In this document: positions 2,039-38,999 of the stretch, one piece after another | Layout of the letters: each line of letters opens with the position of its first letter | How positions within the stretch are numbered: the stretch's first letter is position 1 | NCBI RefSeq assembly: GCF_006345805.1 | Contig: NC_043006.1 | Span: 81,964,001 to 82,028,000 of the forward strand | DNA length: 64,000 nucleotides | Direction of reading: 5' to 3' | Origin: Octopus sinensis | Taxonomy: Eukaryota | Position numbers and translations under genes: made by a program | The notes under the pieces: model-generated | Told to the model about the DNA's origin: nothing | Databases searched by the model: none | The model's input: only the letters and a program-made list of their open reading frames with translations

Positions 2039-3884
2039 TGATGGGATTCTTTCATCATTCAAATCCATTCACAAGGCTTTGGTCAGCATGGAGCTACAGT
2101 AGAAGACACTTGCTTAAAGTTCTACATGATGGAAGTGAGCCCAAAATAGCATGGTTAAGAAGCAAGCTCCTGAGCCACACAGCTATGCCTGTGCACATAA
2201 CAAACATGTGCACACACACACACACACACACACACAATTATATATAAAATCATTGGCTAGTTGCAGCAGCTTACTGATTTTGTAAGGCAGTTGCTGAGAT
2301 GACGGAGTAAAAAAAAATGTATGCTTACAACAAGAGGGAAAGAAACTGAACTTCTCATGATTGCTTATTGTAACAGAAAAATAAATATCATAAATCCATG
2401 TCAACTTGAGCTCTCAACCACTGATGAAACCATATGAGCATCACATATATATATATATATACATGCCGTATATATGCCAGCCCGCACAGTCTGTGTAACT
2501 GTATGCCAAATCTCATATCGCTGCAATGATCTGCCTGTGTTATCTCTTAATGTTCACCACTTATCTTTTCTTTCTGTCCACTCTCCTTTGTCCTAGTACA
2601 GTTCTTTGAAAAAATGGTCTTTGTAACACCATTAGGGTTTGCTAAATGGCTGTAGCTAACACCTGAGCTTTTTGTTCTTCATGAAGGAAACCAAAGACCT
2701 ACATACACAGCAAGATATTTTAATCCTCCACTGAGGACAACTTGCATTATAACTGAAAGATTTTATTAGTATTGGTACAAAGCTTCCATCAGTTTTATGC
2801 TAGCAGGAAATTGATATTTTAATAACATACAGCTAATTTTGTATGACATTGAAGAAAAAGTATTCAACATCAAAACAAATCAAAATGCACCAAGTCAGAC
2901 ATATCAGTTGGTGGATTGTTAATTAAATTCAAGATAATGATATGGTTACAACATCAGATGATTACTGAAATTAATATAGTCAGAGATATTCATTTGACAT
3001 ATATATAAATAAATAGATAGAATTTCGATTCATATAGTGAAAGAATTATGAAGAAACCACAGATGTCATAAAGTAAAAATATTACTGTTTTTTGAGCATT
3101 TAAATACTTGTAAACTATTCCATTAAATTGTCAGGGAAAAATTATTTCTAACTTATTTTCACCTGATTAGTTTCCAAACTAAAAAATTTTAGAAAATTCT
3201 TTCTATTGAATTTTTTCTTTTTCTTTTTAACCCAAATGTCAAAATTTGTAATAAAAAATTACAAAATCAAGGAAATTATACTGTACATCAGCCAGCCTCT
3301 ACAAGATTGTTTGACCTGTTGGAAATAGTAACCAAATTCCACTCGAAATACACCTTACTATGTTAAAGAAGGAAGAACAGTCTTGGATACATTGTCTGGA
3401 ATAAGACATGATGACCATCACTAGAATGTTTTGAACCTAGATGTGTTTGATCAGTGCTGACTTAGGACAAGTAAACTACAGCAACAACAACAAACATAAT
3501 TTGTTTAATCATCAGTACAACCAGCCAACCATCTACAACACCATGGATAGCCATATCATACCAGACAACTAGTTGTGAAGTTCACAGTTTGCATCACAAT
3601 TTTATTAAAACCAGTTGAGATTACCTGCATTACTTAACCACATCTAGATTGAAAGTAAGTTCAGCAGTGAGGTAAATGTAAATTAGAGTTTTTAGCTTAC
3701 TCGCAGGCATGACTATGTGGTAAAAAGTCTGTTTTCTAACCTCATAGTTTCAGGCTTAGTCACACAGTGTGGCACTTTGGGCAAGTGTCTTCTACTATAG
3801 TCCTAGGCATGTTGTGTCTTTGAGCAAGACACTTTAGTTCATGTTGCTCCAGTTCACCCAGCTGGCAAAAATGATGGAATCGAT

Positions 3885-4720
3885 CAAAGTTCAGAGAACT
3901 ACTACCTCTGCTCCTGGGCAAAGTTCAGGGAGCTCCTACCTCTGCTGGTGACAAAGGGTTTCTCATTCAGAGTAAAAGGTAGACTGTATGATGCATGTGT
4001 GCGAACAGCCATGCTACATCACATTGAAACATAGGCCATGACTGCTGAGGACATGCATAAGCTTGTAAGGAATAAAGTTAGTTTGATCCGCTGGATATGT
4101 AATGTCAGTGTGTATACATGACAGAGTGTAAGCGCCCTGAGAGAAAAGTTAGACATAAGAAGCATCAGATGTGGTGTGCAAGAGAGATGACTGTGCTAGT
4201 ATGGTTATGTGTTGCATATGGATGAGGACAGCTGTGTGAAAATGTGTCACACCCTAGCAGTAGAAGGAACCTATGAAAGAGGTAGACTCAGGTAGACCCA
4301 GAATGAAATGTTGAAGCACTATCTTCAAACGTTGGGCCTCACCGAGGCAATGTCAAGTGACTGAGACCTTTGGAGATATGCTGTGCTTGAGAAAACCCAG
4401 CAAGACAATTGATACCATAACCATGGCCAATGCCAGTGCAGCATAACCAGCCCAATTAAGAGCACCCTTTAATCATTGGGCAATAAACTGCACTTGCAAA
4501 GACCTGTTGAGGCAAGTGAAGAAGTCATCACGGCCGATGACAGTACTGCCTGTTTAGCACCTGTGCTGGTGGCACATAAAAAGTACCATTCAAATGTGGC
4601 CGATGCCAGTACCACCTGACTGGCACATAAAAAGCACCCACTACACTCTCGGAGTGGTTCGCATTAGGAAGGGCATCCAGCTGTAGAAACATTGCCAGAT
4701 CAGATTGGGAACCTGGTACA
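3885..4720 (+). mobile_element. Degenerate RTE LINE 3' fragment
   Basis: Clear nucleotide similarity to 24720-25630, with stops and a local duplication at 3885-3935. Confidence 0.85.
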
Positions 4721-5334
4721 AGGTCAGATACTTTTTGACATTATATAAGTATAATGTTACTCTTTTTTAGTCTCTGCATATATATATATATATATCTCAA
4801 AGAAAAAGTCAAAGGTCTGTCCCAAGCCATAGGCAATTTCTCAGATTCTGTAGTGTGTATATATTTCTCCCTTGAATGAGACATTGTCCATCTCAAGATT
4901 ACTAGTTTTTTTTTTTTTACTTTTTTTGGACAGGAGCAACATGAAATATGAAGTCTGACAATTATGAATGCAACACTAACAACTAGGCCATATGCTTCTT
5001 CATAGACATAAATGCTGGGGCATACATACATACATACACACATACACACACACACACATTTAGAAAAGCTGAATTTATTGACAATGATTTCCAAGTGACA
5101 CTCTCTGTCATGGCCAATTACTGGCATTGTCAATAAAATTACTTAAAGTTTTTTTGTTTTTTTTTATAGTAGACTTCATATTTATAGTGAATCTTTTCAT
5201 CAGTTGATGTTCACAGTTTTTACACTTATAAAAAGTACTTCAATTATACATATACGCATGCACGCACACAAGCATACACGCACACGCATGTGTGTATGCA
5301 TGTGTATTTATATGTATGTGTGTGTGAGTGTATG

Positions 5335-5339
<5 letters not shown>

Positions 5340-5369
<30 letters not shown>

Positions 5370-5493
5370 AAATATATGTGTGTGTGTGTATAAATATATA
5401 TGTGTGTGTATGTATAAATATATATATATATGATAAAATATATATATATATATATATATATAAATATATATATATTATAAATATATTATATAT

Positions 5494-36188: not shown

Positions 36189-36299
36189 TTAGCAGACTAA
36201 TGTTACACATCAGCAACCTCATCTCGAGTTTCTGCCTCAATGCCAATACAGCCAGAAACACGGGTGGGATTATCATGACAACATTACTAATGGTATTCC
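36189..36299 (-). CDS. ACER3: Internal coding exon (exon 2 equivalent) of alkaline ceramidase 3
   Basis: Minus strand reads (T)GG-NTISNVVMIIPPVFLAVLALRQKLEMRLLMCNISLL-A with no stops. It aligns without gaps to human ACER3 WNTVSNLIMIIPPMFGAVQSVRDGLEKRYIASYLALT (about 17/36 identical, human sequence recalled from memory). Length is 111 nt with phase 1/1, as I recall for human exon 2. Acceptor is tgtgttttctgtcttccag and donor is gtaagtaa. Confidence 0.9.
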
Positions 36300-36345
36300 C
36301 TGGAAGACAGAAAACACAAGCAGAAATTAATGGATGATAAATAAT
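36300..36345 (-). promoter_or_regulatory. 3' splice site, polypyrimidine tract and candidate branch point of the ACER3 exon
   Basis: Minus strand reads ccattaatttctgcttgtgttttctgtcttccAG. Confidence 0.8.
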
Positions 36346-37953: not shown

Positions 37954-37992
<39 letters not shown>

Positions 37993-38404
37993 GAGGGCAC
38001 TATTACACATAGATGTCACACGCTAAGTATAAGAGTGCCCTCTATATAATATAAATAAATAAATTTAAAGGGAAAAAAATTGAGGGCTTTTTTCTCTTAT
38101 GAGGTTTTTCACGCTAACTACTTGATAAATTCTTATGAAGATTTTATCCTATTTTTAAATTATATATATACATATATAATTAATCAATATAGGGTGGCAA
38201 AAAATTTCGTAGAATTTATTTGCCACCAGCGGCCTAGTGGGAAAAAATTAAATAGTCATAGACCATTTATAAGTTCAACATCACAATCAAGGAATGGCCA
38301 TAATAGGCCATTCACCCACTAGAAATAACAGCCAAAGCTTCAACCGCAAAATAACATTAATTCCGCAAACCAGGAGAAAATTAAAAAAACATTTACCCTG
38401 TAAT

Positions 38405-38507
38405 TTCTTATACGATGCACCGTTTCATCTATTGTTTAATGGTAAACTAACCTGATTAAATTAAATCAAGCCAATCTTCCATAGGCCGATAGATTCGTCA
38501 GTAAGAA
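38405..38507 (-). ncRNA. Mirror copy of the type I hammerhead, sense to ACER3 pre-mRNA
   Basis: Reverse complement of 38698-38798. The two 1-nt insertions relative to the other arm both fall in the stem II insert, so core and stems are intact. Predicted cleavage is between 38411 and 38410. Confidence 0.8.
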
Positions 38508-38697
38508 CAGCCAGATCCGAGCAGATATTATCACGAGGCACCTCTATCCCTGCCTCGGCAATATCTAACCTAAAATTTTCAAATCATCGCACTCGCGCCA
38601 AATTTGGTGCGAGTGCGATGATTTGAAAATTTTAGGTTAGATATTGCCGAGGCAGGGATAGAGGTGCCTCGTGATAATATCTGCTCGGATCTGGCTG

Positions 38698-38798
38698 TTC
38701 TTACTGACGAATCTATCGGCCTATGGAAGATTGGCTTGATTTAATTTATCAGGTTAGTTTACCATTAAACATAGATGAAACGGTGCATCGTATAAGAA
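38698..38798 (+). ncRNA. Type I hammerhead ribozyme with intact core and extended stem II
   Basis: Stem I TTCTTA(38698-703)/TAAGAA(38793-798); core CTGACGA (38704-710); stem II ATCTAT(38711-716)/ATAGAT(38771-776) with a 54-nt insert; GAAA (38777-780); stem III ACGG-TGCA-TCGT; triplet GTA with predicted cleavage after 38792. Confidence 0.8.
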
Positions 38799-38999
38799 AT
38801 TACAGGGTAAATGTTTTTTTAATTTTCTCCTGGTTTGCGGAATTAATGTTATTTTGCGGTTGAAGCTTTGGCTGTTATTTCTAGTGGGTGAATGGCCTAT
38901 TATGGCCATTCCTTGATTGTGATGTTGATATATACATATATATATATATTTATGCGTGTTTGTGTGTGTGTGTGTGTGTATGTGTGTGTGTGTGTGGAA

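What the first reader, a model, noticed from the sequence alone, without database searches (positions are those of the whole stretch)
38405..38798. Pair of core-intact type I hammerhead ribozymes with an unusual 54-nt structured stem II insert inside an ACER3 intron
Seen: every conserved core nucleotide is present (C3-A9 CTGACGA, G12-A15.1 GAAA, C15.2-G16.2, U16.1, A17), with 6-bp Watson-Crick stems I and II and a 4-bp stem III with a 4-nt loop that is also self-complementary. The stem II insert holds its own hairpin (cttgat/atcagg). The indels between the two copies avoid the core and stems. Established: Penelope-like elements carry type I hammerheads, usually minimal, and intronic hammerheads are known in amniotes. 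Inference: this is a young, probably active ribozyme of atypical architecture (A-U at 10.1-11.1, long stem II), with one copy sense to a host pre-mRNA. I do not know whether this family has been described.
Basis: partly seen in the sequence, partly recalled or inferred. Interest (0 to 1): 0.88.

Follow-up and report, generated by a model that had tools for sequence, protein, structure and literature searches.

The report
Hammerhead ribozymes of an invertebrate retrozyme repeat
The two hammerhead ribozyme motifs are real, but they are the two arms of one dead, head-to-head insertion of a ~485-nt tandem-repeat retroelement (a non-LTR "retrozyme") present in thousands of copies in this genome, so the locus is one ordinary copy of an interesting, apparently undescribed repeat family.

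Summary
The motif is present exactly as described: a plus-strand copy at 38698-38798 that would cleave after 38792, and a minus-strand copy at 38507-38405 that would cleave between 38411 and 38410. A descriptor scan found only these two sites in the window and none in 300 shuffles.

The "pair" is not two independent ribozymes. It is the two arms of a 99%-identical palindrome (38176-38928, centre AAATTT at 38600-38605). Each arm is a 5'-truncated copy of a ~485-nt, 38% GC, non-coding repeat.

That repeat occurs about 3,000-5,500 times in the 2.72-Gb genome, as short tandem arrays (period 481-491) and head-to-head pairs embedded in (TA)n. Each monomer carries one hammerhead.

Across subfamilies the catalytic core is kept, while stems I, II and III and the palindromic loop 3 change by compensatory substitutions (11 of 38 pairs; 0 of 500 shuffles reach this). 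The ~55-nt helix II arm is present in every subfamily, and it is the likely reason Rfam Hammerhead_1 misses the motif.

The insertion anatomy matches mobilisation by Penelope-like elements: variable 5' truncation, inverted arms, one "long" and one "short" 3' end, an 11-bp target duplication and AT-rich targets.

Verdict: a new family of metazoan non-LTR retrozyme with an atypical type I hammerhead. Neither arm can release a circle, and in ACER3-like pre-mRNA both are buried in a ~325-bp hairpin. Cleavage was not tested.

The parts
38176..38605 (-). Left arm: a 5'-truncated retrozyme copy covering monomer positions 289-484 and then 1-235 (position 1 is the first nucleotide after the cleavage site). 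It ends at the 'long' 3' terminus ...GATTAATTAT next to (TA)n.
   Evidence: blastn of the monomer against the window gave 99.0-99.6% identity.
38600..38928 (+). Right arm: a 5'-truncated retrozyme copy covering monomer positions 289-484 and then 1-136. It ends at the 'short' 3' terminus ...GATGTTGA next to (TA)n.
   Evidence: The inverted repeat appears as I1, I2 and I5.
38600..38605 (.). Palindromic hexamer AAATTT shared by both arms. It is the head-to-head junction, and both arms start at monomer position 289.
38698..38798 (+). Type I hammerhead, plus-strand copy. Stem I 38698-38703 / 38793-38798; core CUGACGA 38704-38710; stem II 38711-38716 / 38771-38776; helix II arm 38717-38770; GAAA 38777-38780; stem III and loop 38780-38791; A17 38792. 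The predicted cleavage is between 38792 and 38793.
   Evidence: Covariation.
38405..38507 (-). Type I hammerhead, minus-strand copy, sense to the ceramidase gene. Stem I 38507-38502 / 38410-38405; core 38501-38495; stem II 38494-38489 / 38432-38427; helix II arm 38488-38433; GAAA 38426-38423; A17 38411. The predicted cleavage is between 38411 and 38410.
38165..38175 (.). Left copy of the target-site duplication TATATACATAT, inside a (TA)n-like tract.
   Evidence: Read directly.
38929..38939 (.). Right copy of the target-site duplication TATATACATAT.
   Evidence: Read directly.
36190..36300 (-). Host exon (approximate limits) encoding ...GNTISNVVMIIPPVFLAVLALRQKLEMR.... It matches Pfam Ceramidase profile positions 25-59. 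The insertion lies about 2 kb upstream of it in gene orientation, inside the large first intron.
   Evidence: E = 0.0034, below Pfam's cut-off because it is a single exon. Flanking ceramidase exons lie at C10:82195193-82195264 and C10:81935207-81935416, both on the minus strand.

Best explanation
The two motifs are the hammerhead ribozymes of a non-autonomous retroelement of the metazoan 'non-LTR retrozyme' kind.

The family unit is a ~485-nt, AT-rich, non-coding sequence with one type I hammerhead per unit.

Inferred life cycle:
- Tandem arrays are transcribed into multimeric RNA.
- Neighbouring ribozymes pair through their palindromic helix III into a double hammerhead and cut after A17, releasing 485-nt monomers with 5'-OH and 2',3'-cyclic phosphate ends.
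- A host tRNA-type ligase circularises these monomers.
- The multimeric or circular RNA is copied into DNA by the reverse transcriptase/GIY-YIG endonuclease of a Penelope-like element.
- That enzyme nicks both strands of AT-rich DNA, here (TA)n, and starts reverse transcription at two internal template sites: about 128-136 nt and 235 nt downstream of the cleavage site.
- This gives insertions with variable 5' truncation, tandem units, head-to-head arms and one long plus one short outer end.

The window locus is one such product: two arms truncated at the same point (monomer position 289), joined at a palindromic AAATTT and flanked by an 11-bp target duplication.

Shown: motif, family, arrays, covariation, termini, target duplication, host gene context.
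Inferred: self-cleavage, dimer mode, circular RNA, Penelope-like-element mobilisation.

At this locus the ribozymes have no evident role. There is one ribozyme per strand, and in read-through RNA both are locked in a ~325-bp hairpin.
For: Motif and chance:
- Only the two arms match a type I descriptor in the window; 0 of 300 shuffles match.
- CTGANGA-N55-85-GAAACGGTGCATCGTH occurs 2,969 times in the genome, against 0 for the reversed control.

Family:
- A non-ribozyme 30-mer anchor gives 5,491 hits.
- Tandem arrays have period 481-486 and 97-99% identity, and are flanked by (TA)n.
- GC content is 37.6%. No ORF exceeds 66 aa.

Selection on the RNA fold:
- On 95 copies, 94% of cells are paired, against 29-47% when partners are slid. 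Stem I has 4 of 8 pairs with double changes.
- On 16 subfamily representatives, 11 of 38 pairs have changes on both sides (0 of 500 shuffles reach this; slid controls give 0-4). That is 5 of 8 pairs in stem I, 4 of 6 in stem II and 1 of 4 in stem III.
- Loop 3 changes UGCA to UAUA, which keeps it palindromic.
- N7, the one free core position, varies C/A/U.
- The sense strand folds much more stably than the antisense strand: -153 against -113 kcal/mol.
- The ribozyme-competent fold is 2.1 kcal/mol above the minimum free energy fold, and two copies cofold into a double hammerhead.

Insertion anatomy:
- 29 of 32 head-to-head insertions have one end at about position 235 and the other at about 128-136.
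- 5' truncation points vary, and many copies are too short to contain a ribozyme.
- The window insertion has an 11-bp target duplication.

Literature:
- Metazoan retrozymes are low-GC tandem repeats carrying type I hammerheads (PMC7229834); reported consensus lengths span 51-972 bp (10.64898/2026.07.22.740005).
- Penelope-like elements show tandem and inverted 5'-truncated copies, a one-sided 'tail' and a (TA)n bias (10.1101/2021.04.23.441226).
- A purified Penelope-like-element protein nicks and extends both strands at AT-rich DNA and initiates at two internal sites that define the tail (PMC11167929).
- Palindromic helix III and dimeric action are described for these ribozymes (PMC4209133).
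Against: - No biochemical or RNA-seq evidence for cleavage or circles was available.
- Rfam Hammerhead_1 gives no hit even at E<=10.
- The 10.1-11.1 pair at the base of helix II is A-U here, not the usual G-C. In other multi-copy arrays it is A.C, A.A or U.U: 31 of 94 distinct copies are unpaired there. That could mean weak or protein-dependent activity.
- Stems I and II of the window copies are almost all A-U.
- No autonomous Penelope-like partner sharing sequence with the repeat was found; the search was cut short.
- The ~100-nt 'tail' is longer than the 30-40 nt reported for Penelope-like elements.
- A tandem deletion variant lacking the 3' half of the ribozyme exists (L064), so arrays can grow without an intact ribozyme.
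- Conservation of the core is partly by construction, because those patterns required it. and the anchor-chosen loci (9 of 12 intact) are the less biased samples.
Confidence: 0.82

Rival explanations
1. This is a satellite-type tandem repeat that merely carries a processing ribozyme, like newt satellite 2 or cave-cricket pDo500. Copies multiply at the DNA level by unequal crossing-over, extrachromosomal circles or replication slippage in (TA)n, not by reverse transcription.
For: Tandem arrays sit in microsatellites. A variant lacking half the ribozyme is still tandem (L064). No reverse-transcriptase partner was identified.
Against: - There are thousands of dispersed short arrays and sub-monomer fragments on all large contigs.
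- Truncation is polar, always at the 5' side, with two fixed 3' termini.
- The window insertion has an 11-bp target duplication.
- The head-to-head architecture with one long and one short end is the Penelope-like-element signature (PMC11167929).
- Subfamily structure with compensatory changes indicates transmission through a functional RNA.
Confidence: 0.1
2. This is an exapted intronic ribozyme. The minus-strand hammerhead cleaves the ACER3-like pre-mRNA and regulates the host gene, as proposed for the conserved intronic hammerheads of amniotes.
For: The minus-strand copy is sense to the gene and lies about 2 kb upstream of an exon, inside a very large intron.
Against: - It is one of thousands of near-identical young copies.
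- It is flanked by a fresh target duplication.
- In read-through RNA the whole element forms a perfect ~325-bp hairpin at -608 kcal/mol. The antisense arm is transcribed first, so the ribozyme strand is paired as it emerges.
- Cleavage inside an intron need not affect the mRNA.
Confidence: 0.03
3. The motif is a chance look-alike inside a foldback/MITE-type DNA transposon or an assembly-made palindrome, with no ribozyme function.
For: - The locus is a near-perfect palindrome.
- Rfam finds no hammerhead, only generic hairpin (miRNA-precursor) models, all below their gathering scores.
- The stems are short and AT-rich.
Against: - 0 of 300 shuffles match the descriptor.
- There are 2,969 motif copies against 0 for the control.
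- Compensatory changes occur in all three stems.
- Most family members are direct tandem arrays, not foldbacks.
- Inverted junctions fall at different positions in different loci, which rules out terminal inverted repeats.
- About 30 independent loci share the architecture, and the two outer ends differ (235 against 136) with unique flanks. This argues against an assembly artefact.
Confidence: 0.03

Closest known systems
Metazoan non-LTR retrozymes: tandem repeats with type I hammerheads that give small circular RNAs, as in coral, mussel and axolotl (Cervera & de la Pena 2020, PMC7229834; Li et al. 2026 preprint 10.64898/2026.07.22.740005)
   Same: - One type I hammerhead per unit of an AT-rich, non-coding tandem repeat.
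- Thousands of dispersed copies, from fragments to multimers.
- Target duplications longer than 4 bp.
- A weak helix III with a palindromic loop, suited to dimeric action.
- Unit length within the reported 51-972 bp range.
   Different: - Helix II is 5-6 bp followed by a 7x7 internal loop and an ~18-bp imperfect hairpin (about 55 nt in all), instead of about 4 bp plus a small loop 2.
- 10.1-11.1 is A-U or unpaired instead of G-C.
- Helix III is 4 bp.
- Rfam RF00163 does not detect it.
- RNA circles have not been shown.
- I found no cephalopod or octopus family of this kind in the papers searched.
Penelope-like elements and their pLTR hammerheads (Cervera & de la Pena 2014, PMC4209133; Craig et al. 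2021; Frangieh et al. 2024, PMC11167929)
   Same: - Partial tandems and an adjacent inverted 5'-truncated copy.
- A one-sided 3' extension ('tail') bounded by two preferred ends.
- AT-rich / (TA)n targets.
- A ribozyme located upstream of the reverse-transcription start sites.
- Palindromic helix III, and a helix II that is larger than usual.
   Different: - No reverse-transcriptase/GIY-YIG ORF; the unit is only 485 nt.
- The tail is about 100 nt rather than 30-40 nt.
- Helix III is a real 4-bp stem rather than the minimal 0-2 bp.
- Homology to a resident Penelope-like element was not established.
Satellite-DNA hammerheads: newt satellite 2, Schistosoma Sm-alpha, Dolichopoda cave-cricket pDo500
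   Same: Type I hammerhead in a repeat of a few hundred bp. Action as a dimer across tandem units. The ~500-nt unit is similar in size to pDo500.
   Different: I know of no sequence similarity, though I did not test this. This family is dispersed in short arrays with retro-insertion hallmarks rather than in long satellite blocks.
Conserved intronic hammerheads of amniotes (HH9, HH10)
   Same: A type I hammerhead lying in an intron, in sense with the host gene.
   Different: Those are single-copy, ultraconserved and orthologous. This one is a young repeat copy with a target duplication, paired with its own antisense.

Membership tests
Hammerhead ribozyme, type I | Conserved core: C3 U4 G5 A6 N7 G8 A9, G12 A13 A14, A15.1-U16.1, and H17 not G | tested here: met
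   Both arms carry CUGACGA ... GAAA ... U-A17. The core is kept across subfamilies while N7 varies.
Hammerhead ribozyme, type I | Three helices around the core, with helix I open-ended, supported by covariation | tested here: met
   Double changes occur in 5 of 8 stem I pairs, 4 of 6 stem II pairs and 1 of 4 stem III pairs. Overall 92-94% of cells are paired, against 29-47% when partners are slid.
Hammerhead ribozyme, type I | Reaches the Rfam RF00163 gathering score (34 bits) | tested here: not met
   There is no hit at the gathering threshold or at E<=10. The 45-position model has no room for a ~55-nt helix II insert. The same model finds another hammerhead family in this genome.
Hammerhead ribozyme, type I | A G10.1-C11.1 pair closing helix II (usual, but not absolute) | tested here: not met
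   The pair is A-U in the window. Elsewhere it is A.C, A.A or U.U. G-C occurs only in one old subfamily.
Hammerhead ribozyme, type I | Site-specific self-cleavage after position 17, giving 2',3'-cyclic phosphate and 5'-OH ends | not testable with these tools
   This needs in vitro transcription or end-specific RNA sequencing.
Metazoan non-LTR retrozyme | [quoted passage not shown] | tested here: met
   Period is 481-486 with up to 11 units seen. GC is 37.6%. The longest ORF is 66 aa.
Metazoan non-LTR retrozyme | Dispersed multi-copy distribution with insertion hallmarks (target duplication, truncated copies) | tested here: met
   2,969 to 5,491 pattern hits across contigs. 5'-truncated fragments are common. 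The window has an 11-bp target duplication.
Metazoan non-LTR retrozyme | Expressed as unit-length linear and circular RNA | not testable with these tools
Penelope-like-element-mobilised (non-autonomous Penelope-like-element derivative) | Partial tandems, plus an inverted 5'-truncated copy, plus a one-sided tail between two preferred 3' ends, at AT-rich targets | tested here: met
   29 of 32 head-to-head insertions have one end at about 235 and the other at about 128-136. All sit in (TA)n. Compared with PMC11167929 and 10.1101/2021.04.23.441226.
Penelope-like-element-mobilised (non-autonomous Penelope-like-element derivative) | Sequence homology of the unit to the pLTR / 5' region of a resident autonomous Penelope-like element | not tested
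   A search for a short-helix II relative with the same helix III found nothing.
Foldback / MITE DNA transposon | Terminal inverted repeats of fixed extent at the element ends, with a fixed-length target duplication | tested here: not met
   Inverted junctions lie at variable internal positions, the outer ends differ (235 against about 131), and most copies are direct tandems.
Amniote-type conserved intronic hammerhead | A single-copy, orthologously conserved intronic position | tested here: not met
   This is one of thousands of 97-99%-identical copies. Orthology across species could not be examined.

The most novel reading that the evidence does not exclude
The family may define a distinct structural variant of the type I hammerhead. 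In it, a constant ~55-nt helix II arm (5-6 bp, a 7x7 internal loop, then an 18-bp G.U-rich hairpin) replaces loop 2, and the 10.1-11.1 pair is dispensable. The ribozyme would then work only as a tandem dimer and/or with the help of the Penelope-like-element protein. Separately, its thousands of 'one long end, one short end' head-to-head insertions would be a natural genome-wide record of two-site, two-strand priming by a Penelope-like-element reverse transcriptase on a circular or multimeric RNA template.
Probability: 0.3. Interest if true: 0.62.

Novelty: new member of a known kind. Interest (0 to 1): 0.48.

Why it matters
- It shows that a standard covariance-model scan (Rfam Hammerhead_1) misses an entire, abundant ribozyme family of about 3,000 intact motifs because of a helix II insertion. 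Hammerhead and retrozyme censuses in invertebrate genomes are therefore likely to be undercounts.
- The family offers clean natural covariation data for a hammerhead with a non-canonical helix II base and a palindromic loop 3.
- The family also gives a large set of insertions whose ends fit the recently proposed two-site, both-strand initiation of Penelope-like elements.
- For genome annotation, such head-to-head copies create long perfect hairpins inside introns. These are potential substrates for RNA editing or small-RNA pathways in an animal group I believe is known for heavy RNA editing. Whether this genome is a cephalopod rests on my memory of assembly statistics and was not verified.

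Tried and rejected
- Rfam at the gathering threshold and at E<=10 found no hammerhead. The only hits were sub-threshold plant and animal miRNA-hairpin models on the palindrome, which I take to be generic long-hairpin matches.
- The bacterial promoter/terminator scan is not meaningful for this eukaryotic locus.
- I looked for a short-helix II ancestor or Penelope-like-element version carrying the same helix III and found 0 hits.
- One pattern aimed at non-tandem continuations past position 235 was badly designed: the code B includes G, so it returned mostly tandem junctions. It did reveal the 'T' subfamily.
I cut no further loci and used only the match lines that the pattern search itself prints. 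As a result, the autonomous Penelope-like partner, target duplications at other loci, and full monomers of the T and old subfamilies were not examined.
- I tested whether the helix II insert is more conserved than the rest of the unit. It is not significantly so: 4 of 56 variable columns against 51 of 378, p = 0.28. I make no such claim.
- Literature searches for a described cephalopod or octopus hammerhead or retrozyme of this type found none in the held library. A giant-squid genome paper reports 235 Rfam hammerhead-1 hits without further analysis.
- Organism identity was not established. The assembly size matches a published 2.72-Gb octopus assembly, but the link rests on my memory.

Full report
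OBSERVATION

Plus strand:
- TTCTTA (38698-38703)
- CTGACGA (38704-38710)
- ATCTAT (38711-38716)
- a 54-nt insert (38717-38770)
- ATAGAT (38771-38776)
- GAAA (38777-38780)
- CGG-TGCA-TCG-T
- A17 at 38792
- TAAGAA (38793-38798)

The mirror copy runs on the minus strand from 38507 to 38405, with A17 at 38411 and a 56-nt insert.

The only correction at this level is that the fourth pair of stem III is G.U rather than Watson-Crick.

A type I descriptor that I wrote requires stem I >=5 bp, CUGANGA, stem II >=4 bp with any insert up to 90 nt, GAAA, stem III >=3 bp, and H17 not G. It finds only these two sites in the 64-kb window. It found none in 300 dinucleotide-preserving shuffles, and a mean of 0.02 per shuffle at relaxed settings.

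Rfam does not report a hammerhead here, either at the gathering threshold or at E<=10 on the 1.2-kb region. The only matches there are sub-threshold miRNA-hairpin models, which respond to the palindrome.

THE "PAIR" IS ONE INSERTION

The two motifs are the arms of a near-perfect inverted repeat. blastn of the family monomer against the window resolves it, numbering the monomer from the first nucleotide after the cleavage site:
- Left arm, 38605 down to 38176: monomer positions 289-484, then 1-235.
- Right arm, 38600 to 38928: monomer positions 289-484, then 1-136.
- The arms share the palindromic hexamer AAATTT (38600-38605).
- They differ by one substitution and two 1-nt indels.
- The insertion is flanked by the direct repeat TATATACATAT (38165-38175 and 38929-38939) inside a (TA)n-like tract. 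This is an 11-bp target-site duplication.

THE FAMILY

The window is C10:81964001-82028000 of a 2.72-Gb assembly.

Copy number and organisation:
- The right arm has at least 1,368 first-look matches, and the 52 scored ones are 95-100% identical.
- Many lie head-to-tail. Tandem Repeats Finder gives period 484-485 at 97-99% identity, for example 6.5 units in L038, and the arrays abut (TA)n.
- The pattern CTGANGA-N{55,85}-GAAACGGTGCATCGTH occurs 2,969 times, against 0 for the reversed control.
- A 30-mer from outside the ribozyme occurs 5,491 times at <=2 mismatches.
- The unit is 37.6% GC and has no ORF above 66 aa.
- Each unit has exactly one hammerhead.

Is the core conserved in a sample not selected for it?
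- In loci chosen through the non-ribozyme anchor, most insertions are short 5'-truncated fragments without the ribozyme region.
- Of the 12 copies in those loci that do span the ribozyme region, 9 carry the exact motif. The remaining three differ mainly by single-base changes or indels.
- Single-base homopolymer indels are frequent throughout the copies and look like long-read assembly noise.

COVARIATION

Several subfamilies, 87-99% identical to the window's, were recovered.

On 95 distinct copies:
- 94.1% of pair cells are standard pairs, against 29-47% when the 3' partners are slid by 1-3 columns.
- Stem I has 4 of 8 pairs with changes on both sides.
- The fifth pair of stem II switches A-U to G-C in 27 copies.

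Pattern listings anchored outside the 3' core and on the 5' half revealed two further groups.
- A 'T' subfamily (447 junction hits). Its stem III is ACGG-UAUA-CCGU, stem II is AUCCG/CGGAU, and the 1.1-2.1 pair is G-C.
- Older, more divergent subfamilies. Their stem III is ACAA-UGCA-UUGU or ACGA-UGCA-UUGU, and stem I is UACUUUA/UAAAGUA. In one case the cleavage triplet is GUC and the 10.1-11.1 pair is G-C.

On 16 subfamily representatives:
- 11 of 38 pairs show changes on both sides. None of 500 shuffles reach this, and slid controls give 0-4.
- By stem, that is 5 of 8 in stem I, 4 of 6 in stem II and 1 of 4 in stem III.
- The loop 3 change UGCA to UAUA preserves self-complementarity. This is what a double-hammerhead (dimeric) helix III predicts.
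- N7, the one unconstrained core position, varies among C, A and U.

Caveats:
- The counts are of sequences, not events; I estimate roughly ten independent compensatory events.
- The 5' core was required by the patterns.

FOLD

- The isolated arm folds with stems I and II and the long inner hairpin in the minimum free energy structure (z = -2.8 and -3.5).
- The complete ribozyme-competent fold is 2.1 kcal/mol above the minimum. Two copies cofold into a double hammerhead with a 12-bp intermolecular helix III.
- Stem I continues beyond a small internal loop into a 4-bp distal helix.
- Helix II consists of 5-6 bp, a 7x7 internal loop, and then an ~18-bp G.U-rich hairpin.
- The full monomer is far more stable in the ribozyme sense (-153 kcal/mol, z = -6.1) than in the antisense (-113 kcal/mol). 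This fits selection on the sense RNA.
- No member of the family with a short helix II exists (0 hits).

An unexplained point is that the 10.1-11.1 pair is not maintained. It is A-U in the window and in most copies, A.C, A.A or U.U in whole arrays, and unpaired in 31 of 94 distinct copies.

HOW THE COPIES WERE MADE

Every insertion examined ends, on its 3' side, either at monomer position ~235 (...GATTAATTAT) or at ~128-136 (...GATGTTGA).

Head-to-head insertions:
- They are always 'tails out'.
- Their 5' truncation points vary.
- In 29 of 32 cases, including the window, they have one long end and one short end.

This is the anatomy described for Penelope-like elements: 5' truncation, partial tandems, an adjacent inverted 5'-truncated copy, a one-sided 'tail', and a bias for (TA)n (10.1101/2021.04.23.441226).

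It also fits the in vitro behaviour of a purified Penelope-like-element protein. That protein nicks and extends both DNA strands at AT-rich sites and starts reverse transcription at two internal template sites that delimit the tail (PMC11167929).

Metazoan tandem repeats with type I hammerheads have been named non-LTR retrozymes and shown to give small circular RNAs (PMC7229834). A 2026 preprint argues that they derive from the pLTRs of Penelope-like elements (10.64898/2026.07.22.740005).

I therefore read this family as a non-autonomous retrozyme mobilised by a Penelope-like element. Three points remain open:
- The tail here is about 100 nt, not 30-40 nt.
- No autonomous partner was identified.
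- The symmetric junction at a palindromic hexamer (289/289 here; 89/89 and 71/71 at two other loci) suggests that the two cDNAs joined through self-complementary microhomology. That is inference.

THE LOCUS

Ceramidase-family exons lie on the minus strand of C10 on both sides of the window. One exon, matching Pfam Ceramidase positions 25-59, lies in the window at about 36190-36300. The insertion therefore sits in a large intron of an ACER3-like gene, about 2 kb upstream of that exon, and the minus-strand ribozyme is sense to the gene.

Two things make a role at this locus unlikely:
- Each strand carries a single ribozyme, so no unit-length RNA can be released.
- A read-through transcript folds into a ~325-bp perfect hairpin (-608 kcal/mol) that pairs each ribozyme with its antisense.

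The locus is best seen as a dead-on-arrival copy. Its most plausible effect on the host is as a long intronic double-stranded RNA.

COMPARISON AND NOVELTY

The system works like, and meets the testable criteria of, a metazoan non-LTR retrozyme with a type I hammerhead.

It differs from described examples in four ways:
- the constant ~55-nt helix II arm
- the non-canonical helix II base pair
- a 4-bp helix III
- invisibility to Rfam RF00163

The same model does find a second, unrelated, canonical hammerhead family in this genome.

I found no description of such a family in the papers searched.

I file it as a new member of a known kind with variant ribozyme architecture. Self-cleavage, dimer dependence, circular RNA and the partner Penelope-like element remain to be shown.

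Noticed in passing
L036/L037 (G000:C16:25146363-25146408 and 25146794-25146839), L031, L034, L035: A second, unrelated hammerhead family that Rfam RF00163 does detect (34-48 bits). It has stem I GUGUAC/GUACAC, a canonical G10.1-C11.1 helix II (GACCC/GGGUC) and a palindromic ACAUGU helix III. It occurs as a 432-nt tandem on C16 and inside a 1.2-kb inverted repeat in L034.
   Followed up: partly
L064 (G000:C1:4995000-4998600), locus coordinates 1502-2325: A two-unit tandem of a deletion variant lacking monomer positions 440-484, which is the 3' half of the ribozyme including the cleavage site. Arrays can therefore exist without an intact hammerhead.
   Followed up: no
L039 800-1272: A 184-nt tandem repeat (2.5 copies, 86% matches) of a tRNA-SINE-like unit, directly beside a retrozyme array and a (TA)n tract.
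   Followed up: no
window 38600-38605; L069 and L073: Some head-to-head junctions are exactly symmetric: both arms start at the same monomer position (289/289 in the window, 89/89 in L069, 71/71 in L073). In the window the junction is the palindrome AAATTT. Most other loci are asymmetric.
   Followed up: partly
G000:C1:32654043-32659238 and 446 other junction matches: The 'T' subfamily (junction GAATTTTTTGG), with arrays of up to 11 units. Its helix III is a perfect 12-nt palindrome, ACGGUAUACCGU. It was missed by the first ribozyme pattern and was seen only through match lines.
   Followed up: partly
many copies, e.g. L023, L056, L076: Frequent single-base deletions in homopolymer runs (GAAAC to GAAC, TTT to TT). 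They look like long-read assembly errors rather than real variation, and they inflate the apparent share of broken ribozymes.
   Followed up: no
window 37968-38067: A separate 45-nt-arm inverted repeat (84% complementary, 10-nt spacer) next to a (TA)n/(TC)n microsatellite, about 100 bp upstream of the insertion.
   Followed up: no
window 38929-38997: A compound (TA)n-(TG)n microsatellite directly after the right arm. The insertion target was the (TA)n part.
   Followed up: no
whole assembly G000: The assembly is 2,719,151,902 bp in 13,516 contigs, and contig C10 is 105,892,736 bp. This fits my recollection of a published 2.72-Gb chromosome-level octopus assembly (size cited in PMC12564688). 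The identity was not verified with tools.
   Followed up: partly
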